Shown here piece by piece: positions 38,701 through 60,567 of a DNA stretch of 64,000 bases. Position 1 is the stretch's first letter. Every line of letters starts with the position of its first letter. The stretch lies in assembly GCA_965202585.1 (NCBI GenBank), contig OZ241828.1, forward strand, positions 53,134,001 to 53,198,000, in the 5' to 3' direction. Under the pieces are notes generated by a model. The model saw only the letters and a program-made list of their open reading frames with translations, was not told where the DNA came from and searched no databases. The translations under genes were made by a program, and so were the position numbers. Source of the DNA: Thalia democratica. Its lineage: Eukaryota.

Positions 38701-41700
38701 CGTAGAAAAACAACTTCTCTAAAAATATATCTCCTTCTACGTTTTTGAGATAAATGCCTCAAGTTTTAATGTTATTTGCAATATTTAGCAAAACATTTTG
38801 AATCAAATTTTTAAAAGGGTTAAAAAAAGGAGTAATAAAAAAAATTGTTTTAGTTTTTTTTTAATCTGTAAAAAGCAACTTTTAGCTTAGTTTAAACTGT
38901 CCAAAGTAAGATTATGTAGTGAAAATACAGGATTTAAGCCCTCTATGCTCTTAAGTTTGTTTACCTCTGAACATTTAAATAGAGAATTTAAATGCTAATT
39001 AATAAATTTAAATATAACATCATTGTGAAGTTTTGATATTAAAGTTTAGCTTAGGACTATAAAAAATTGGAATTTAAAGCATTCTTTGAACAGACTTAGG
39101 AAATTCTAAAGACTTAAGAATTTTAAACCTGTATGCATTATACCTATATTTGTTATCTAATTAATTTTTTTGATTTAACATACCCAAAACATTTCATTGG
39201 ATACAACACATGCACTTAAACTAAATACAGTAAATATTAAACAAATAACCAGTCTGCTGGTTTGCATAAAATATGCTTAAATTAAACTTATAAACTATAC
39301 TTAATAAGTTACCAAAAATGTATTAAGAATGATTAAATACCTTTAAACTAATTTGAGTAAAACTATTACGATACTTGTTTATATTATCAAAAAACAAACT
39401 AACCAGTCTGTTTACTTGGACGAAGGAAGCTTAAAGTAAGATAATAAACTAAATTGAAAAAGATATCTAACTAAAAACTTAAAGCTATTAAAGAAATTTA
39501 TCTATACTACCAAGCTGCCAACTGACCAGTCTGTTAGCTTGCACGAACGACGCCAGCGTGTTGACGCAGATCGTCTGCTCCTCGTCACAATCCTCGCCCT
39601 CGTCACCCGACGCCACGTAAGCGTGCAGCTTCAACACGTCATCGCGACACGCCTCGCTGATCTGCGCCACGTTGTACTCGTCACGCTCCGACGCGTTCGC
39701 TTTGACCCAGTTTATCAGCGCTGCGTGATTGGTTGGTTTTGTTTGAATTCGAATATGTTACAGGAGTCGATAATTGCCAGGAAAAAGTAAAAGTTTAATA
39801 GTCAAACATTGTAAATCCTATTCAGCAATTTCCCATTAAAAAAGTTTGGCATCTATTTTTCAAAGACAATAAAGTAATCAAACTGGATAGAAGTATCTTA
39901 CTGTTTTTGTAACAAAAGCAAATGCTCGAAAATACTTAAGTTAAATTTCATCTATAAATCAACTTGCTTTGTTGATCAGCTTATTATATTTTAACCAAAT
40001 TTACAAATTATAAATTAATTTTATCAATTGAAAAGAGTACAAAAGTTTTACCGAAAAGCTTTGTATAAAACGGAAATAAAATGAATATATTGATATTTTT
40101 ATTGTAAATTGTTTTTAAAAACTTATAAAAGCCTTCCTGCAGTTATGTAAAAAATTCAAGTTTTTTGCTAAATCAAAGTTTGAAAAAATAAAACTTTAAC
40201 TATTTTAAACATAAATTTGAGCCATGATTCATTCAAAAATATTTTTGTTAAGCGGACAAATAAAATTGATTTTAGCTAACATTTATTAATTACTTTTGTT
40301 AGCAACTAATTCTAAATGAAATTTGGAGTAAGTAAACAGTTAGAGGTTTCATCAGAAAATATTCAATTAATACCAATTAGCATAATAAGTAAAATTTGTT
40401 AGGGATAAATTAACAGTTTATACTTACATAATTATGAATTAATTAATTAGTAATTAAATAAGTTAAGCAAACGTATATATATAAAATAAAAAAAACAAGA
40501 AATATAATAGAATAAGCGAAAAACAACAATCATAACAACTTAAAAAAATTATATTTATAAACGTACTGTTGCTTGCATAAATTAGGTTTAAACGTTTTTA
40601 TAAATAAAGATAAAGTGTATACCGGCAGAACGTCCCATAGATTTATATTATAAGAGACCAACATATTTAAAAATCCCTTAGAAGTTGAATGGACATGGGT
40701 TTGAAAAAACCATTTAACAGGTCATTGGCGATTGCCGAACACTTATTAAACTATTATGATTAAACCAAGAATTATAGTGATAGTCATTTTTTAATTATAA
40801 GTGAAGCACGTAATGATTATCATCAAAGTGTCTTAGAGTCTTTATTTATAAAACGTTTAAACCTAATTTATGCAAGCAACAGTACGATTATAAATATAAT
40901 TCTTTTAAGTTGTTATGATTGTTGTTTTTCGCTTATTTTATTATACTTATTGTTTGTTGTATTTTTATATTTATACGTTTGCTTATCTTAGTTAAATTAC
41001 TATTTAATTTATTTATAATTATTGTAGGATAATTAGACTATAGCTCATTTTAGTGTTTATGTTTATACTTGTTTTCTTTTCAGATTTTACATTGTTAATA
41101 AATTATTAAACTAAATTGACAAGGAGTTATTCTTCATGTAAAATCTTATCAACAATCTGAGAAAAGTAAAATGGTTATAGTAAAGTGCTTAATTCGTGGA
41201 TGCGAGTTCCAGACGCCAGATCTATCCGGTGATGTTGTGAGTAGCCTTCTCAACCTCCACAAAGTGGAGCGTCAGCAAAACTCTGAGTTATCCAATAATG
41301 GAGTAATGCCAAATGCACCTCTATTGATTCGACCAAGGGTTGACCGGGGGACCAGCCAAGAGACATGGCTTGCTTTCATTCGGAGGTGGGAGGTATTCAA
41401 GATTGGTTCGAATATAAGCAACCAAAACGCAAGCATACAGCTTTTTCAGTGTGCGCAGGACAAGCTTGGAGATCTTATGTTAGCAAGTGATCCTCGACTG
41501 ATGACCAAATCAGAAAGTTACGTTTCTAAACTGATGGAGTCGATTTGATATAATTTCCTTTATTGAAAGTAAAGAAATGGGACGCCATGCAACTGAGAAT
41601 TCGCGGACCATATCTGCAGTCTCTTCCTTTCAACGTCAGAAGAAGGGACGTGTCAATATAGGAGATAAGTCTCAACATGTTCCGTGCCAGAACTGTAAAA

Positions 41701-44700
41701 GGCTTTTCTATCCTTTCAACGAAAAAAGTAACCAAAATAAAAAGCCTTTCAGATATTGTTTATCTTGTTGGCGTAGTCAATCAAAAAGGGTTAATGCTGT
41801 TCAAATCCAAGCTGATCGTTCTGATTTTATGCAACAAGATACCCAAATAATGTCACTACACGCAAGTAAAAGAATCATGTTGAATAACACCATATTCAGC
41901 AAGAAGTCCTTGCGTAAAGCCAAGGCAACGACTGATCATCCTCGTGCATCAGTCAAGATTGCTAGACATGGCACAAACAAGTTTGCATGGGTAAGTGCTT
42001 TAGCTGATACTGGAGCACAGTCGAACCTTTGGGGGTGGAAAAACTTTCAGGAGGCTGGTTTTTGTAAGAAGGATTTAATGCCTGTATCCATCACAATTCG
42101 GGCTGCCAATAAAATTCCTATTAACATTCTAGGGGCTTTTAAAGCGACTTTCAGCGGAATGTCTCCAAAGAAGGAGGTTATCAGATGTGATGGAATTGTT
42201 TATGTAAGCGATTCAGTGACCGGATTCTTTCTCTCCTATGAAACCATGGTTGACCTCCTGATTATTAATAAAGATTTTCCCACCATTGGATCTCAACTGC
42301 CTCATCAGCATTCTGAAGTTGCTGTAAGTTCAAATGAAAATGATCCGAACAGACTGGACTCGCATAAAAATGTGACCTGTGATTGCCCGCCAAGGAGTAG
42401 AGTGCCAGACCGACCAAACAAACTTCCGTTTGAGGCAACAAATACAAACGTTAGCAAAATGCGTGATTGGCTCTTACAAAGGTACGCAGCTTCAACGTTT
42501 AATGTATGTCCACATAAATTACTTCAGCAAATGAGTGGGTCTCCACTTGAGATACATTTGGAGAATGATGCTAAACCACGTGCTTGTCATACAACAGCTC
42601 ACGTGCCAATTCATTGGCAGAAACAGGTTGAAGCAGATCTCATTCGAGATGTGAGGTTGGGTGTTTTAGAACGTGTCCCATTTGGTGAACCTGTAAGCTG
42701 GTGTCACCGCATGGTGGTCACCAGGAAACAGGATAGGTCACCTAGGAGGACAGTAGATCTCTCACCACTTAACAAGTATTGCAAGAGGGAGACGTGCGCT
42801 ACAGATACTCCGTTTAAACTAGCGCGCAGAATTCCAAAGGGAACGTTCAAGACTGTAACAGATGCATGGAACGGGTATCATGGAGTTCCACTGAGAGAAA
42901 GTGATAAACACCTCACTACATTTATCACTCCGTTTGGCAGGTTCCGATATACTAGAGCACCTCAAGGCTTTGTATCATCTGGTGATGGTTACAATCGACG
43001 GTTTGCAGCTATTTTATCTGATTTTGAAAGACAGGAGAGGTGTGTTGATGACACCATATTTTTTGATTCAGAATTAGAGTGTCACTGGTGGCGAACAATA
43101 GATTTTCTGTCAAAAGTTGGCAATGCAGGCATCATTCTAAATCCCAAAAAGTTCCAGTTTTGTCAAAAGTCCGTTGATTTTGCTGGATTTAGAATTTCTG
43201 ATGAACGTATAGAACCTTTGCCCAAACACTGGATTCCATTCGCAATTTCCCAACCCCAAAGTCTGCCACAGATATACGCAGCTGGTTTGGTCTGATAAAT
43301 CAAGTCGCAAATTATGCCAAACTTCGTAAAGTCATGGCACCGTTTAGAGATTTTCTCAGTCCAAAATGTAAGTTTATGTGGACAGAAAAATTAAACCAAT
43401 CATTTAATGAATCAAAAGAGATAATCATTGACGCAATAAAGAGCGGTGTTCAAATTTTTGATCTTGGGAAACTGACTTGTCTTAGACCAGACTGGTCAAA
43501 GCAAGGATTGGGCTACTTCCTTATGCAGAAACACTGCAAATGCAATAGCCGGTTACCAGATTGCTGCACCACCGGCTGGAAAGTGACGCTTGCAGGTTCA
43601 AGGTTTCTGAATGGGGCAGAAAAGAATTATGCTGCCATAGAAGGGGAGTCGCTTGCTATTGCTTGGTCATTAGAACAGACAAAGTATTTCACTAAGGGCT
43701 GCAAAGATCTTGTGGTTGTTACGGATCATAAAACACTGGTAAAGATTTTTGGTGATCGCACCTTAAACGAAATTCACAACACGCGCATTTTTAGGCTCAA
43801 ACAACGTACTTTGCCATGGCTTTTTCAAATGCATTACATGCCAGGTAAAACTAATCTAGCGGCAGATGCTGCATCGCGTTATCCAAGCTCGATTAATGAA
43901 GTTAATTCACATGATAATGATTTGACTAACGAATCACTTCTAATTGCTTCATTGAGTAATGAAGTATGCCATTCAATGGCAATCACTTGGGAGGAAATTG
44001 TAGAAGAGACACTAAATGACAAAGTTCTTTCAAGAGTATCCAGGTGTATTGAGGAAGGTCGAAGCTTGAAACATGATGAATCTTTGTCAGCATATTTTAG
44101 ATACGATGATGCATTGTACTTAAGTGATGGGGCTATACTTTACAAGGACAGAGTAGTAATCCCCGTCAGTTTACGATATCGGGTCCTCAACAAGTTACAC
44201 TCGGCGCACCAAGGAGTCACATCAATGCATAGTCGTGCCCAACAGATTGTCTTCTGGCCTGGTATTACACAAGACATTGAAGCAATTCGGGCCAATTGTC
44301 AAAGCTGCAACCGCAATTCACCTTCTCAACCATCATTGCCACAAGAAGCATCTGATCCTCCTACAAACCCTTTTGAAAAAATATTCGCAGATTTTTTCCA
44401 GTTTGCCGGAAACAATTTTTTGGTAGTCGGTGATAGGTTGTCGGGTTGGTCAGAAATATTTTCCACACCCAGCAGAACCTCTCAGGCAGGTTCGCGTGGG
44501 TTGATTAAGTGCCTCCGAGTTTTGTTTTTCAGGTTTGGAGTACCCGAGGAAATATCGAGTGATGGTGGACCGGAATTTACGTCCAGTGCAACAAAGGAAT
44601 TCCTTAAAACCTGGGATGTCACGCATCGAATATCTTCAGCTTACTATCCAAGATCAAACGGCAGAGCGGAAGTAGCCGTCAAACAGGTAAAAAGGTTGCT

Positions 44701-47700
44701 AAGATCAAATGTTGACGCTTCAGGAAGTCTGGACAATGACAAGTTTTTAAGTGCGTTGCTCCATCTGAGAAATACTCCTGATAGCAATTGTCAAGTGTCT
44801 CCAGCCGAGATCATATATGGACGTCAGCTGCGAGATAGTTTCTCATTCTTAAACAAACTTGACAAATTCTCCAATCCTAATGTGCGACCCATGTGGAGAA
44901 AAGCATGGAAGCTTAAGGAAGAGGCGCTCCGTACAAGATTTGTTAAGAATTCTGAAGTACTTAACCAAAGAGCCAGGGATTTGCGACCTCTCTATGTTGG
45001 CAGTAGGTGTCTACTACAGAACCAGAGTGGCACTCATCCACGTAAATGGGACAGAAGCGGAGTGATAATGGAGGTGCTTCCACATGATCAGTATGTAGTC
45101 AGAGTTGATGGTTCACGGAGACTTACTCGGAGGAACAGAAAATTTTTAAGGATGTACAACCCAGCCTCAACAAGCATTGAAGCAAAAACTTCCCATGGTT
45201 GGAGCAGTAATTTACCAAGCTCACATGAGTGCAATGTTGGTCCTCAACGTCCTGATTCTTCTGTAAAGATTACAGAGGATTCCAACAGTGCCAATAGTGG
45301 TAAAACCAGTGAGGTTGAAGCGGATCATGAAGAGGTTGGGGAAGAGTACATTCCTGCTCCTATAGTTCCCAAAAAAAAATAAGGTGCCGCTTGCTTTGCG
45401 TAGGTTGAAAGACTTCAATGCGCCAGGGAGGCTTGAAAGTGGAGTACTCCAAAGTAGAAATCACCGTAAGTGAAGTCTGCTTGTTCCTGTTTATACAAAA
45501 GTTTGTGCTGAGTGTTCAATTGATGCTGATATAATGATTGCTGAGCCAGGAAGGATTCAGCGTGGAATAGCATGAATTTGTATTTTTTTGGATTTATTTA
45601 GTGCGTTTTATTGCAGTTTTGGTTTTCTTCAAATAAATCCCTTGTTTAAAGATTTTTTATTTAAGTCAATTGAGTTTTTTTTTTTAAATTTAGTTTCATC
45701 TTAGTAAAATATTTTTGTTACTTGTTTAAATCCCCTCTTGACGAGCTATGTCATTGCCTTAAACTTGTTATTATCTTTAATGAGCTGGAGGGGCTGTAGG
45801 ATAATTAGACTATAGCTCATTTTAGTGTTTATGTTTATACTTGTTTTCTTTTCAGATTTTACATTGTTAATAAATTATTAAACTAAATTGACAAGGAGTT
45901 ATTCTTCAATTATGCTATTATAACTTGTTAATCTATCTCTAATTTATTTTGCTTAATTATACTAATTGTTAATAATTGAATATTTTTTGATGAAACCTCT
46001 AACTTTTTACTAACTTAAAATTTGTTGCTAACAAAAGCAATTGATAAAAGTTAGCTGAAATCGATTTTATTTGCTGCTTAATAAAAATGTTTTTTGAATG
46101 AATCATGTCTCAAAGTTCTGTTTAATATATGTAGTAAAAAAAGTTATACATTAGATTTAATTATTCTATTTAACTAGTACAAAAATCTAACCATTTTCTT
46201 GTTGGTAAAATGGGCCTTGTTCATCGATATCTTTTGAATTATTCGAAATAAATTCGTTGATTTTGTACTGCTTGTCCAATACCTTAGGTAGAAGCTCTTT
46301 TCTTAAACTCTGATATGATGATCTGTTTGAATAAAAAAATTGCAAATTTAAAGAAGTATTCATAATATCATATATATACAGGGTGGGCCAAAAGTTCTTG
46401 GACTAATTCAAAAACGCTTTATTAGCAAAAAAACAAAATACAAATGAAATTAATGGCATAGAGGGGTTAGTAAGGCACTTTTTTACACGTTGGTGTCATT
46501 TTTAAGATTTCTAACTTAACTAACAATTACTTTTTACCGTTTCTTATAACAGGGTTGCCACTCTCTGAGTCAAAAAAAATCTGCTTTAAGTGACTAAAAA
46601 CTACCCAGAGTTATACAATTTTTTAAAAAATCCTAGAATTTTTTTTTTTGCATCTGGCGCAAACTACTTATACCTCATGTTCTTTTTTTCTCAATAAAAT
46701 GTTTGTGAATACTTCTGCATTAGATGCTCACTAAACTTATGAGAAATACTATTTTAGAAGGCTCAACGTTAAAAGTTTATGTAATAAAATAAAGTTTGAA
46801 TTTTAAAAAGACATTTCGATTGACTAAATTTAATTCTATCACATAAAGTACAGTACTCACTTGCATAAACAAACTTAAATAATGATAAGCATAGATTTCA
46901 GATTTAAAATTAAAACTACAATGTTATTTGTATGAATAATGAAGATCTAGCCGCAAAGCTAAAAAGAATTTAAAACAAGTATTTCTAAATTAATAAAAGT
47001 CATGTTCTTGAACAAAACTTGGTAAATAAAATAACAAAATATTGAAACTGGACCAAATAGATCTCATTCTAGATCTAGAAAAAAATCTGCCCTGAGATTT
47101 TTAAGAAATTTTAATACTATCCCGAGTTTTTTATAAAAAATCAAAACTACCTTGAGTCATCTTGAGTTAAAAAAAAATCAAAATATCCTAGTTATCCTGA
47201 TTTACCCTGAGATTTTCTAAAATTTCAAAACATGCTGAGTTTCCTGGAAGTGTGGCAACCTTGTTATAATAAAAACTAGTTTTTTGAGATATGAGGACAA
47301 AGTCGGACAGTTCAGTAGGATCTTTTTGGAAGGGCGAAGTGAAAAAAACTTAGAAACTTTTTACAAAAATAATTTATCTCAAAACTTGATAAAATGTTTT
47401 GTGTTGTATTAAAAATGGTTTATAATTTATACTTTAAGCTTTAGTACAAGAGTCAATATTATTTTTTGTAAAAAAAAATGTCTTTAAAAAAATACAAAGC
47501 ATATAAAAATAATAATTAAGAAGTATGAATAAAAATCTGTTTTTACAAGCAAGTAATTTTTTGTAAATGATCATAAAGTTAATCATTCAAATATCTAAAT
47601 ACTAAATACCAGTAATCGTCAAAGTGTGCACCTGTGCACACTATTGTGCAAAGAATTATTTTTTTTACTGTGAAAATAAAATTTTGTAAGGTTAAAAAAA

Positions 47701-59526: not shown

Positions 59527-60567
59527 TTAAACTAGCTCAGATTTTACTTCAACTGTAATTGTTTGCTTATTTCTTAAAACTGTCAAAACAACCTTTTCAT
59601 TGAGCAACAAAGCCTTACTTATGTCTTGCGTAGACCTTGCTGGCTCCCCATTCACTTCAACAATCACATCTTTTTGCCTCAACCCTGCTTTTAATGCTGG
59701 TGAGCTGTCAGTAACACTGTCAACGTAAAGCCCTTCTGCTGGAGTTTCACTGCACTTGTACATTTGTTCAAGCTGCCCAGCAATGTTCTTTGTCAGTTTG
59801 AGGACCCTCAACCCAATGTGCCTGCGCTTTTCCAAAACCCCCTGCTTGCTGGTGACCTGCTCCACAAACTTCAGAACGTACTCTGAAGGCACTGCAAAGC
59901 CAACGCCAGCAGAAGCTACCAAAGCGTTCATCCCAACAACTTCACCTGACAAGTTCACCAGCGGGCCACCCGAGTTGCCATTGTTTATAATCGCGTCCGT
60001 TTGTATGTAGTAACCCACAGTTGAGTTCTTGGCCTTGATGTCCTTGCTCAGCCTGTTAACATTGCTGAGCACTCCGTGGGTGACAGAGTCTCTCAATGAC
60101 AGCGGACTTCCTACCGCCATCACCCAGTCTCCGACCAAAGTGCTTCCTGCCTTGTTCAGCTTGACTGTCTTGAAGTTTGTCCCATTGATCTTGATGGCAG
60201 CCAGGTCTGAAGAGCCTTGCACATGCACCACCCTACCCTCGTGGTCGCTCCCATCATTCATTCTGACCACAAACTTGTCATGCTTTCCAACCAGGCTTGC
60301 TGCTGTCACAATCAGCCCGTCCTCTGCAACCAAAAACCCAGAGCCGGTGGTCACAAGGGAGCTCCCTGCTGATTTCTGCGACATGCCTTTGATGTTGACC
60401 ACCGCAGGCAAGACTCCTTCTAAGACATCCGCTATGAAGTTAAACTCCCTTTTGTCTTTATGGGCTGCCGCCGCCATGCAAGGAGCTCTTTTGTTCTTTA
60501 GCTTCCAAACAATAAATGAACATATGAGAGTTTTCAGTGGGAGTACAAATCTACTGGTTGTATTCAT
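59527..60567 (-). CDS. Intronless HtrA2/Omi-like protein (trypsin-like domain plus PDZ), 346 aa, catalytic His replaced by Ser
   Basis: Metazoan HtrA motifs FNFIADV, TGSGFLV, SDLAAIKI, GDWVMAVGSP, YIQTDAIINNGNSGGPLVNL.GEVVGMN, and PDZ HIGL...SPALKAGL...DVIVEVNG. The TNAHVV motif reads TAASLV. Confidence 0.9.
   Translation of the reverse strand: MNTTSRFVLPLKTLICSFIVWKLKNKRAPCMAAAAHKDKREFNFIADVLEGVLPAVVNIKGMSQKSAGSSLVTTGSGFLVAEDGLIVTAASLVGKHDKFVVRMNDGSDHEGRVVHVQGSSDLAAIKINGTNFKTVKLNKAGSTLVGDWVMAVGSPLSLRDSVTHGVLSNVNRLSKDIKAKNSTVGYYIQTDAIINNGNSGGPLVNLSGEVVGMNALVASAGVGFAVPSEYVLKFVEQVTSKQGVLEKRRHIGLRVLKLTKNIAGQLEQMYKCSETPAEGLYVDSVTDSSPALKAGLRQKDVIVEVNGEPARSTQDISKALLLNEKVVLTVLRNKQTITVEVKSELV

What the first reader, a model, noticed from the sequence alone, without database searches (positions are those of the whole stretch)
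41080..41147. Tf1-style self-priming signature in a Gypsy retrotransposon that does not look like a chromovirus
Seen: the bases after the 5' LTR are TGTAAAATCT, not TGG as in tRNA-primed elements. They pair perfectly with LTR bases 41082-41091, or 11 bp counting A41136 with T41092. Pairing stops exactly at A41082, the +1 A of an initiator-like TCAGATT. The 43 nt looped out can form stems (TGTTAA/TTGACA, TTAATA/TATTAA occluding AATAAA, GGAG/CTTC). Established: S. pombe Tf1 primes reverse transcription with the first 11 nt of its own mRNA annealed to the PBS and cut by RNase H, a mechanism I know only from the Tf1/sushi chromovirus group. This element has no chromodomain, and its RT and integrase tail (DAWNGYH; VRVDGSRRLTRRNRKFLR) look Mag-like (tentative). 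Inference: an independent or previously unrecognised tRNA-independent priming system in a marine-invertebrate Gypsy lineage.
Basis: partly seen in the sequence, partly recalled or inferred. Interest (0 to 1): 0.85.

Follow-up and report, generated by a model that had tools for sequence, protein, structure and literature searches.

The report
Self-primed Gypsy retrotransposon family, marine animals
A young 4.9-kb Gypsy-type retrotransposon carries, right after its left repeat, 10-11 bases that pair with the likely start of its own RNA, and every related element checked keeps this pairing with its own sequence, so the family most likely starts DNA copying by self-priming, as yeast Tf1 does, instead of using a tRNA.

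Summary
The element spans 41023-45908, with identical 114-bp LTRs, a 5-bp target duplication and a polypurine tract. The 10 bases after the 5' LTR are the exact reverse complement of LTR bases 41082-41091, or 11 bp counting A41136/T41092. Chance gives this about 6e-4 to 2e-3 times per site.

The decisive evidence is comparative. Nine relatives (47-62% protein identity) from a sea anemone genome and ENA metagenome assemblies have the same arrangement with eight different primer sequences. The helix is 11 bp and all Watson-Crick. Eight positions covary, and pairing drops to about 50% or less from position 12 on.

The paired LTR segment always starts 0-2 nt from a T-rich+YAG motif. A poly(A)-signal-like hexamer follows it 16-38 nt further on. 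This fits the start of R.

This is the Tf1 self-priming signature. No chromodomain, Retrotrans_gag, CCHC or protease Pfam match occurs in 27 members. I could not place the family relative to the Tf1/sushi or Mag clades because no reference sequences were reachable.

Self-priming is also predicted outside chromoviruses (the plant copia TAR lineage), so the mechanism is known and the lineage is new. The window copy has two frameshifts in gag-pol. I rate it a new member of a known kind, of moderate interest.

The parts
41018..41022 (.). Target-site duplication, left copy (ATTAT)
   Evidence: Identical 5 bp flank the element on both sides.
41023..41136 (+). 5' LTR, 114 bp, TG...CA, 23% G+C
   Evidence: 114/114 identical to 45795-45908.
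41023..41081 (+). Inferred U3, ending in a T-rich tract plus CAG
   Evidence: This is the part of the LTR upstream of the complementarity. A T-rich+YAG motif lies at the same place in all 10 family members. The U3/R boundary is an inference; no transcript data were available.
41082..41092 (+). Self-primer segment: the inferred first 11 nt of the transcript (R), AGATTTTACAT
   Evidence: Exact complement of 41136-41146. The equivalent segment covaries with the PBS in the relatives.
41097..41102 (+). AATAAA poly(A) signal inside R
   Evidence: A poly(A)-signal-like hexamer lies 16-38 nt after the start of the primer segment in all 10 elements.
41123..41135 (+). Short hairpin (GGAG / CTTC) just 5' of the PBS, in the position of a U5-IR stem-loop
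   Evidence: Present in the minimum-energy fold of the window. A hairpin sits at this place in the folds of L004, L006, L011, L014 and L015. Covariation here is weak and was not quantified.
41136..41146 (+). Primer-binding site: 41137-41146 TGTAAAATCT, plus the terminal LTR base A41136, which also pairs
   Evidence: It does not start with TGG. The gag ATG follows 24 nt after the PBS (the first ATG starts 35 nt after the LTR end, at 41171).
41171..45382 (+). gag-pol gene, broken. Relatives encode one polyprotein of about 1566-1635 aa; this copy has two frameshifts and no stop codon inside the aligned parts.
   Evidence: tblastn with five intact relatives gave three segments, two frame switches and zero internal stops in every case.
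42006..42017 (+). Protease active-site motif DTGA
   Evidence: No Pfam protease family is matched.
42816..43196 (+). Reverse transcriptase domain (Pfam RVT_1), with catalytic box CVDD
   Evidence: Pfam E = 1.4e-12. Ty3 RT is the best PDB match, E = 3e-21. C precedes VDD in 23/27 members.
43379..43768 (+). RNase H domain (RT_RNaseH / RT_RNaseH_2)
   Evidence: Pfam E = 3e-15.
44159..44650 (+). Integrase: H2C2 zinc domain (44159-44323) and catalytic core (44363-44650). No chromodomain follows.
   Evidence: Pfam. Ty3 and foamy-virus integrases are the best PDB matches. No Chromo hit even at E<=1.
45782..45794 (+). Polypurine tract region (GAGCTGGAGGGGC) abutting the 3' LTR
   Evidence: A similar CTGG(A/G)GGGG tract precedes the 3' LTR in most relatives.
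45795..45908 (+). 3' LTR
   Evidence: Identical to the 5' LTR.
45909..45913 (.). Target-site duplication, right copy (ATTAT)

Best explanation
The feature is the primer-binding site of a self-primed LTR retrotransposon. It belongs to a compact Ty3/gypsy-type family: 4.9-5.3 kb, LTRs of 114-335 bp, and one gag-pol reading frame in intact members.

Proposed mechanism:
1. Transcription starts in the 5' LTR at or within 2 nt of A41082, just after a T-rich+YAG motif.
2. The first ~11 nt of the RNA fold back over a 43-nt R/U5 loop. The loop holds the poly(A) signal and a small hairpin.
3. Those 11 nt pair with the last base of the LTR plus the 10 bases that follow it.
4. As in Tf1, the element's RNase H would cut the RNA after the paired 11 nt. 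The freed 3' end would prime minus-strand DNA synthesis, so no tRNA is needed.
5. Plus-strand strong-stop synthesis copies the primer. The PBS is therefore rewritten from the R sequence at every cycle. This would explain why the helix is perfectly Watson-Crick in every member although its sequence differs.

Shown: the complementarity, its position, its length, its covariation and the absence of a tRNA-type PBS.

Inferred: the transcription start, the cleavage and the priming itself.

The copy in the window inserted recently (identical LTRs) but cannot make its own polyprotein as assembled (two frameshifts).
For: (1) Exact 10+1 bp complement at the LTR/leader junction. Chance is about 6e-4 with a shuffled LTR and 2e-3 at arbitrary window positions.

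(2) All ten family members with a readable 5' LTR show the same arrangement. These are the window, L004-L009, L011, L014 and L015, at 47-62% protein identity. They carry eight different primer sequences. Per-element shuffle p values range from below 5e-5 to 2.7e-3.

(3) Anchored pair count:
- Positions 0-10 are paired in 10/10 or 9/10 elements.
- Positions 3-10 show 2-4 Watson-Crick pair types each.
- There is no G-U pair.
- From position 11 on, pairing is 3-7/10.
The helix is therefore 11 bp, the length reported for Tf1 (PMC7175516).

(4) RNAalifold predicts only this helix. On the trimmed alignment, 9 of 12 pairs have changes on both sides. All cells (100%) are paired, against 72% in shuffles and 31-52% when partners are slid.

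(5) L006 and L009 compared with L011 differ by one compensated T>C / A>G change.

(6) Every single-sequence minimum-energy fold pairs the 5' end with the PBS; z = -1.4 to -3.9.

(7) LTR anatomy fits R starting at the complement. T-rich+YAG lies just upstream, a poly(A)-signal-like hexamer 16-38 nt downstream, and the LTR end 55-78 nt downstream.

(8) There is no room for a tRNA site. No PBS starts with TGG, and the gag ATG follows the PBS by 0-2 nt in L006, L011 and L015.

(9) The number of CA|TG junctions with a 10-nt upstream complement in the sequence held (9 of 736) equals the number of family LTR/PBS junctions carrying one.
Against: - No transcript 5' end, strong-stop DNA or cleavage product was seen; everything after 'the bases are complementary' is inference.
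- The start of complementarity relative to the YAG motif varies by 0-2 nt among members. In some of them the first 1-2 transcribed bases may therefore be unpaired, unlike the strict 'first 11 nt' of Tf1.
- L014 has only 8 bp, and its LTR end was set from the family pattern because its 3' LTR is truncated.
- TATA-like motifs upstream are inconsistent.
- No host tRNA set was available, so complementarity to tRNA fragments was not scanned directly.
- The window copy and its 97.6%-identical partial copy L001 are both broken, so this particular copy is not autonomous as assembled.
Confidence: 0.8

Rival explanations
1. The inverted repeat is a structural element of the 5' leader, for instance a closing stem that regulates translation of gag, packaging or dimerisation. 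Reverse transcription would be primed by something else not yet recognised.
For: - The helix abuts the gag start codon in several members, so it could affect translation.
- Folds are only moderately more stable than shuffles; z = -1.4 to -3.9.
- No priming product was observed.
Against: - The 3' arm always begins exactly at the LTR end, where a primer must sit.
- No other candidate PBS exists in the 10-35 nt leaders.
- A helix kept only by selection on RNA structure would be expected to tolerate G-U pairs and length variation. Here 0 G-U pairs occur, and the length is fixed at 11 bp in nine of ten elements (8 bp in L014). That fits the PBS being copied from the primer.
Confidence: 0.1
2. The element is primed by a tRNA or an internal tRNA fragment, as copia-type elements use half-tRNAs. 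The match to the LTR would be incidental.
For: - Half-tRNA priming exists in Ty1/copia lineages (PMC6317226).
- The host tRNA repertoire could not be examined.
- Steamer-like Mag-family elements of bivalves have a tRNA-type PBS (PMC11046912).
Against: - No PBS starts with TGG.
- Eight different PBS sequences occur among close relatives, and each matches its own LTR. tRNAs are conserved across animals and would not co-vary with LTRs.
- Chance matches are excluded by shuffles.
Confidence: 0.03
3. It is a chance inverted repeat in very AT-rich DNA.
For: The window is 27% G+C. A 10-nt complement to the preceding 114 nt (starting at the first base after it) occurs at 0.2% of arbitrary window positions.
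Against: The same arrangement recurs at the same junction in ten of ten elements, with different sequences. These include LTRs of 38-40% G+C.
Confidence: 0.01

Closest known systems
Tf1 / Tf2 / Tj1 of fission yeasts (self-primed Ty3/gypsy elements; Levin 1995-1998, as summarised in PMC7175516 and PMC4600332)
   Same: - The PBS lies directly after the 5' LTR and is complementary to the (inferred) 5' end of the element's own RNA.
- The helix is 11 nt long.
- There is no tRNA-type PBS.
- A small hairpin lies just 5' of the PBS, where Tf1 has its U5-IR stem-loop.
- Intact members have a single gag-pol reading frame.
   Different: - No chromodomain at the integrase C-terminus in 27 members.
- gag has no Pfam match. 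It carries a CxxC...CxxC knuckle, and Pfam zf-CCHC is not matched.
- The RT catalytic box is CVDD.
- LTRs are very short (114-335 bp).
- Hosts are animals.
- The pairing includes the last base of the LTR, and its 5' edge may sit 0-2 nt inside the transcript.
- The phylogenetic relation to Tf1 was not testable here.
Vertebrate sushi group and fungal or plant Tcn1, Maggy, Skippy, Cft-1, Boty and Grasshopper (predicted self-primed chromoviruses)
   Same: They have the same predicted priming signature. Some of them live in fish genomes, as do members of this family.
   Different: Those are chromoviruses with a chromodomain. This family has none. Whether it branches inside, beside or far from them is unresolved.
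Plant Ty1/copia TAR lineage (Houba, Osr-1), predicted self-primed (PMC6317226)
   Same: It shows that self-priming signatures exist outside chromoviruses, so a non-chromoviral self-primed lineage has precedent.
   Different: It belongs to a different superfamily with a different pol domain order, and its hosts are plants.
Mag / C-clade elements of marine animals (SURL, Steamer-like elements)
   Same: - Compact elements of about 4.8-5 kb with short LTRs and a single gag-pol frame.
- A CCCC-type zinc knuckle in gag.
- Wide, patchy distribution in marine animals (PMC11046912).
   Different: The Steamer-like MchSLE1 has a tRNA-type PBS and a CCHC finger. This family has neither. Membership in Mag was not testable.

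Membership tests
Self-primed LTR retrotransposons (mechanistic class; prototype Tf1) | The sequence immediately 3' of the 5' LTR is complementary to a segment inside the 5' LTR that can be the 5' end of the transcript | tested here: met
   10+1 bp in the window. 11-13 bp in eight relatives and 8 bp in one. The start lies 55-78 nt before the LTR end.
Self-primed LTR retrotransposons (mechanistic class; prototype Tf1) | The complementarity is maintained by compensatory change among relatives | tested here: met
   Eight variable helix positions, all Watson-Crick. 9 of 12 pairs have changes on both sides. The observed covariation score was reached in 0/500 shuffles.
Self-primed LTR retrotransposons (mechanistic class; prototype Tf1) | No tRNA-type PBS (TGG... 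complementary to a tRNA 3' end) | tested here: met
   The PBS starts TGT or TGA in all ten elements. Leaders are too short for a second site. tRNA fragments were not scanned, for lack of host tRNAs.
Self-primed LTR retrotransposons (mechanistic class; prototype Tf1) | The transcript starts at the first paired base | not testable with these tools
   No transcript data. There is only indirect support from the T-rich+YAG motif and the downstream poly(A) signal.
Self-primed LTR retrotransposons (mechanistic class; prototype Tf1) | RNase H cleavage after the paired ~11 nt produces the primer | not testable with these tools
   This is a biochemical step. The only related result is that the helix length (11 bp) matches the reported Tf1 value.
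Self-primed LTR retrotransposons (mechanistic class; prototype Tf1) | Additional RNA structure between primer and PBS (U5-IR-like stem-loop) | tested here: inconclusive
   A 3-6 bp hairpin just 5' of the PBS appears in most single-sequence folds. RNAalifold does not recover it on the family alignment.
Chromoviruses, including the Tf1/sushi clade (phylogenetic family) | [quoted passage not shown] | tested here: not met
   No PF00385 hit at E<=1 in the window protein and three intact relatives, nor at E<=0.1 in 27 members.
Chromoviruses, including the Tf1/sushi clade (phylogenetic family) | RT / RNase H / integrase group with Tf1 and sushi in a phylogeny | not testable with these tools
   No named Metaviridae references beyond Ty3 could be obtained.
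Chromoviruses, including the Tf1/sushi clade (phylogenetic family) | Ty3-type gag (Pfam Retrotrans_gag) and retropepsin-type Pfam protease. These are typical of the group by my own knowledge; they are not strictly defining. | tested here: not met
   No gag or protease Pfam family was matched in 27 members. A gag profile finds nothing in the PDB.
Mag lineage (including SURL / Steamer-like C-clade) | RT phylogeny groups with Mag, SURL or Jule | not testable with these tools
   No reference sequences were reachable. Cluster names of more distant relatives are empty.
Mag lineage (including SURL / Steamer-like C-clade) | tRNA-type PBS and a CCHC nucleocapsid finger, as described for the Steamer-like MchSLE1 (PMC11046912) | tested here: not met
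   The PBS is self-complementary. There is no zf-CCHC hit in 27 members; a CCCC knuckle is present.
Ty3/gypsy (Metaviridae) superfamily | Domain order PR-RT-RNase H-IN, with a Ty3-like RT and an H2C2 + DDE integrase, flanked by LTRs with a TSD and a PPT | tested here: met
   Pfam domains are in this order. Ty3 is the best PDB match for both halves.

The most novel reading that the evidence does not exclude
Self-priming arose independently, or is ancestral and far more widespread than thought, in a non-chromoviral Ty3/gypsy lineage. That lineage has an atypical RT active site (CVDD) and has spread, possibly horizontally, among distant marine animals (cnidarians, Antarctic fishes, and unidentified hosts sampled in ENA metagenome assemblies). 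If so, tRNA-independent priming would be a recurrent solution in LTR elements and not a peculiarity of the Tf1/sushi chromoviruses.
Probability: 0.4. Interest if true: 0.6.

Novelty: new member of a known kind. Interest (0 to 1): 0.5.

Why it matters
Self-priming frees an LTR element from dependence on a host tRNA. It also removes exposure to tRNA-fragment-based silencing of the PBS, a defence discussed for tRNA-primed elements (PMC7472051, seen only as a title and abstract).

So far the mechanism is demonstrated experimentally for Tf1. Elsewhere it is predicted mainly for chromoviruses, plus one plant copia lineage.

This is a well-sampled animal family with natural covariation across eight primer variants. 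It gives a clean comparative data set on what the mechanism requires: a fixed 11-bp length, an invariant CAU/AUG end, a loop of 43-66 nt, and a flanking hairpin. It also extends the host and domain-architecture range of self-primed elements.

There is a practical point for annotation. LTR-finding pipelines that demand a tRNA-type PBS will miss or mis-score such families.

Tried and rejected
(1) Clade placement failed by every route available.
- PDB sequence searches return only Ty3 and retroviral enzymes.
- AlphaFold models of the two pol pieces (pLDDT 71 and 74), searched against BFVD, return retroviral and caulimoviral polymerases and no Metaviridae references.
- Source names of relatives are 'hypothetical' or generic.
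- The exhaustive representative search gave a gradient of unnamed relatives down to about 30% identity: 4507 clusters at E<=1e-30. Cluster look-up of ten of them gave no names.

(2) IMG/VR scans found no family member; two loci at 27% identity were not used. The JGI metagenome scan gave one partial copy without LTRs (L001).

(3) Four of the fetched loci did not contain a usable 5' LTR: L010 (fish; truncated or rearranged copy), L012 and L013 (contigs start inside gag), and L001.

(4) TATA-box spacing is not a usable indicator of the transcription start. Motifs are inconsistent in these AT-rich LTRs.

(5) Host identification through the neighbouring HtrA-like gene gave only metagenomic near-identical hits; named proteins are at 39% identity or less.

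(6) tRNA search: there is none in the window, and only one in all loci (tRNA-Lys in L014). No host tRNA set could be built. Rfam finds nothing in the window.

(7) Older primary papers on Tf1 priming (PMC1369541, PMC109269, PMC6388632) are not held. The Tf1 facts are cited from later open papers.

(8) Literature searches for self-priming in Mag, Gmr1, CsRn1, Cigr, Osvaldo or SURL clades found nothing.

Consensus lines printed by the alignment tools were not used.

This brackets the breaks and should not have been written.
Full report
**What is at the coordinates**

The finding sits at the junction between the 5' LTR and the leader of a complete LTR retrotransposon, 41023-45908 (4886 bp).
- The two LTRs (41023-41136 and 45795-45908) are 114 bp and identical at 114/114 positions. 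They begin TG and end CA.
- They are flanked by a 5-bp target duplication, ATTAT.
- A polypurine tract region (GAGCTGGAGGGGC) abuts the 3' LTR.
- The LTR occurs only twice in the window.
- The internal region encodes, in the usual Ty3/gypsy order, a DTGA protease motif, reverse transcriptase, RNase H, an H2C2 zinc domain and an integrase core.
- Ty3 is the best solved-structure relative of both halves.

**Check of the observation**

The ten bases after the LTR, TGTAAAATCT (41137-41146), are the exact reverse complement of 41082-41091. T41092 pairs with the terminal LTR base A41136, giving 11 bp. The next pair is a C/T mismatch, so the helix ends at A41082, inside TCAGATT.

Shuffling the LTR gives a complement of 10 nt or more, starting at the first post-LTR base, in 0.06% of 200,000 trials. 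At arbitrary positions of this very AT-rich window (27% G+C) the rate is 0.2%. Taken alone the match is unusual but not overwhelming.

The fold of 41082-41150 closes with this helix. It extends through TGTTAA/TTGACA and contains the GGAG/CTTC hairpin.

**Relatives and covariation**

The RNase H-integrase piece has more than a thousand relatives in public protein collections. The best 120 are 47-63% identical.

Nine loci contain a recognisable 5' LTR: L004-L009, L011, L014 and L015.
- LTRs are 116-335 bp, and five pairs are 100% identical.
- 5-bp target duplications are recognisable in most.
- A CTGG(A/G)GGGG-type polypurine tract is present.

In every one, the bases directly after the LTR are complementary to an internal LTR segment 55-78 nt upstream of the LTR end. 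The segment differs between elements:
- AGATTTTACAT (window)
- GATTAAAACAT (L004)
- AGATCCAAACAT (L005, L007)
- GACTCTTTCAT (L006, L009)
- GACTCCTTCAT (L011, from the sea anemone Actinostola)
- TACGTATACTCAT (L008)
- TGTGATTCTTCAT (L015)
- AACCACAT (L014)

Per-element shuffle p values range from below 5e-5 to 2.7e-3.

I anchored all ten on the invariant CAT of the LTR segment and on the terminal A of the LTR.
- Positions 0-10 pair in 10/10 or 9/10 elements.
- Positions 3-10 show two to four different Watson-Crick pairs each.
- There is not a single G-U pair.
- From position 11 on, only 3-7 of 10 pair.

The helix is therefore 11 bp long. [quoted passage not shown]

RNAalifold finds only this helix on the family alignment. 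On the trimmed alignment, 9 of 12 pairs have changes on both sides. All cells are paired, against 72% in column shuffles and 31-52% when the partners are slid by 1-3 columns.

L006 and L009 differ from L011 by a single compensated change (T>C with A>G).

Among 736 CA|TG junctions in all sequence held, nine have a 10-nt complement within the preceding 100 nt. That number equals the nine family LTR/PBS junctions that carry a 10-nt complement, although the nine hits were not listed one by one.

L014 is the weakest case. It has 8 bp, and its LTR end was set from the family pattern because its 3' LTR is truncated.

**Anatomy of the LTR**

In all ten elements the paired segment begins 0-2 nt from the end of a T-rich tract followed by TAG (CAG in the window). 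A poly(A)-signal-like hexamer lies 16-38 nt downstream, and the LTR ends 55-78 nt downstream.

This is what is expected if the paired segment is the start of R. In the window that gives a U3 of 59 nt and an R+U5 of 55 nt.

The leaders are minimal. The gag ATG follows the PBS by 0-2 nt in L006, L011 and L015, and by 24 nt in the window. There is no room for a conventional 18-nt tRNA site, and no PBS starts with TGG.

Most single-sequence folds also show a 3-6 bp hairpin immediately 5' of the PBS (GGAG/CTTC, or GGAT/ATCC in L004), in the position of a U5-IR stem-loop. The family alignment does not recover it, so I treat it as suggestive only.

**Most likely mechanism**

The family most likely initiates reverse transcription by self-priming of the Tf1 type.
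1. The 5' end of the RNA folds back on the PBS.
2. The RNA is cut after the paired 11 nt.
3. The freed end primes minus-strand synthesis.

The complementarity, its place, its length and its covariation are shown. The transcription start, the cut and the priming are inferred.

One further inference follows from the general scheme of reverse transcription. Plus-strand strong-stop DNA copies the primer, so a self-primed element rewrites its PBS from its own R at each cycle. This would account for helices that are perfect and free of G-U pairs despite divergent sequences. Selection on RNA folding alone would not predict that.

The rivals are weaker.
- A leader stem with a non-priming role is possible, but it does not explain why the 3' arm always starts exactly at the LTR end, nor the Watson-Crick-only pattern.
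- tRNA or tRNA-fragment priming does not fit eight different PBS sequences that each match their own LTR.
- Chance is excluded.

**State of the copy in the window**

Intact relatives encode a single gag-pol polyprotein of about 1566-1635 aa. Compared with five of them, the window copy has two frameshifts and no stop codon inside the aligned parts. Its LTRs are nevertheless identical.

Either an already defective copy was mobilised in trans very recently, or the assembly carries indel errors.

A 97.6%-identical partial copy from another metagenome (L001) is also broken, with two frame switches and three stops.

**Comparison with what is known**

Self-priming has been demonstrated for Tf1. It has been proposed for:
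- Tf2 and Tj1;
- the vertebrate sushi group, Tcn1 and several fungal chromoviruses;
- the plant Ty1/copia TAR lineage, outside Gypsy (PMC4600332, PMC7175516, PMC6934838, PMC6317226).

This family differs from the chromoviral self-primers in several ways.
- No chromodomain, no Retrotrans_gag, no CCHC finger and no Pfam protease family is detected in any of 27 members, twelve of them full-length.
- A gag profile matches nothing in the PDB.
- gag carries an N-terminal CxxxxC...H motif and a CxxC...CxxC knuckle.
- The RT catalytic box is C-V-D-D in 23 of 27 members, never with Y or F. DAWNGYH is nearly invariant.

No tool returned named Metaviridae references other than Ty3, and names attached to relatives are uninformative.

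The Steamer-like Mag-family element MchSLE1 is described with a tRNA-type PBS and a CCHC finger (PMC11046912), which this family lacks.

Metazoan Gypsy diversity includes many unnamed clades (PMC6238403). I found no report of self-priming in Mag, CsRn1, Gmr1, Cigr or Osvaldo-type elements in the library searched.

**Hosts**

Named relatives come from:
- notothenioid fishes (Champsocephalus, Trematomus, Gymnodraco, Eleginops, Pseudochaenichthys);
- the sea anemone Actinostola;
- a transcriptome labelled Piridium sociabile, a parasite of a whelk, so possibly host-derived.

Most relatives are unnamed ENA metagenome contigs whose sampling environment I did not check.

The host of the window itself is not identified. 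A neighbouring intact HtrA-like protease gene has 97% and 86% matches only in metagenomes, and at most 39% identity to named animal proteins. 'Marine invertebrate' is plausible but unproven.

**Verdict**

The interpretation as Tf1-style self-priming is well supported at the sequence level (confidence 0.8).

The stronger claim of an independent, previously unrecognised system is not established. The mechanism is known, it has precedent outside chromoviruses, and the clade is unresolved.

I classify it as a new member of a known kind: a chromodomain-less animal Gypsy family with the self-priming signature. Interest is 0.5.

The decisive functional experiment lies outside what this report may propose. 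Transcript 5'-end mapping, sequencing of natural strong-stop intermediates and a reference phylogeny are the descriptive tests that would settle the open points.

Notebook checkpoint entry 1 records the three reading-frame pieces of the broken gene with coordinates and frames, which brackets the breaks.

Noticed in passing
window 42816-43196 (RT domain); alignment A3: The RT catalytic box of the family is C-V-D-D: C in 23/27 members, otherwise I, V or L, and never the usual Y or F. The motif DAWNGYH is nearly invariant. This is an atypical active-site neighbourhood for a Ty3/gypsy RT.
   Followed up: partly
window 59527-60567 (- strand): An intact single-ORF HtrA-like serine protease (Trypsin_2 + PDZ). 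Proteins 97% and 86% identical exist only in ENA metagenome contigs. The nearest named proteins are vertebrate HTRA1/4 at 39% identity or less. The host is therefore an unplaced, metazoan-like genome of 27% G+C.
   Followed up: partly
window 41070-41083 and the equivalent sites in L004-L009, L011, L014, L015: A T-rich tract followed by YAG lies directly 5' of the start of the self-primer in all ten elements. It reads as an initiator. It also has the form of a 3' splice or trans-splice acceptor.
   Followed up: no
L006:4586-4600, L011:3381-3395, L015:6989-7004: The gag start codon follows the PBS by 0-2 nt, so the primer helix abuts the AUG. Priming and translation of the same RNA may compete.
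   Followed up: no
L001 (ERZ1740068 contig, 2530 bp): A 97.6%-identical partial copy of the window's element from a different metagenome assembly. It is also broken, with two frame switches and three stops. The same or a closely related host was therefore sampled elsewhere.
   Followed up: partly
L008:89-14973: Three Gypsy-type pol genes lie within 15 kb: one family member flanked by two others, one of them on the opposite strand. This is a local nest of retroelements. The family member's LTR ends TA instead of CA, and about 1 kb separates the end of pol from the 3' LTR.
   Followed up: no
gag region: window 41171 onward; L006:4596-5861; L014:5461-6927; L012:3-1025: gag has no Pfam or PDB sequence relative. 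It carries an N-terminal CxxxxC...H motif and a CxxC-(17-21)-CxxC knuckle, and no CCHC finger was detected (Pfam zf-CCHC: 0 of 27 members).
   Followed up: partly
L010 (Champsocephalus esox chromosome CM070479.1): The fish copy is truncated or rearranged. There is no LTR pair, and a 79-bp direct repeat overlaps the coding region. About 1 kb of duplicated sequence with a GT microsatellite lies downstream.
   Followed up: partly
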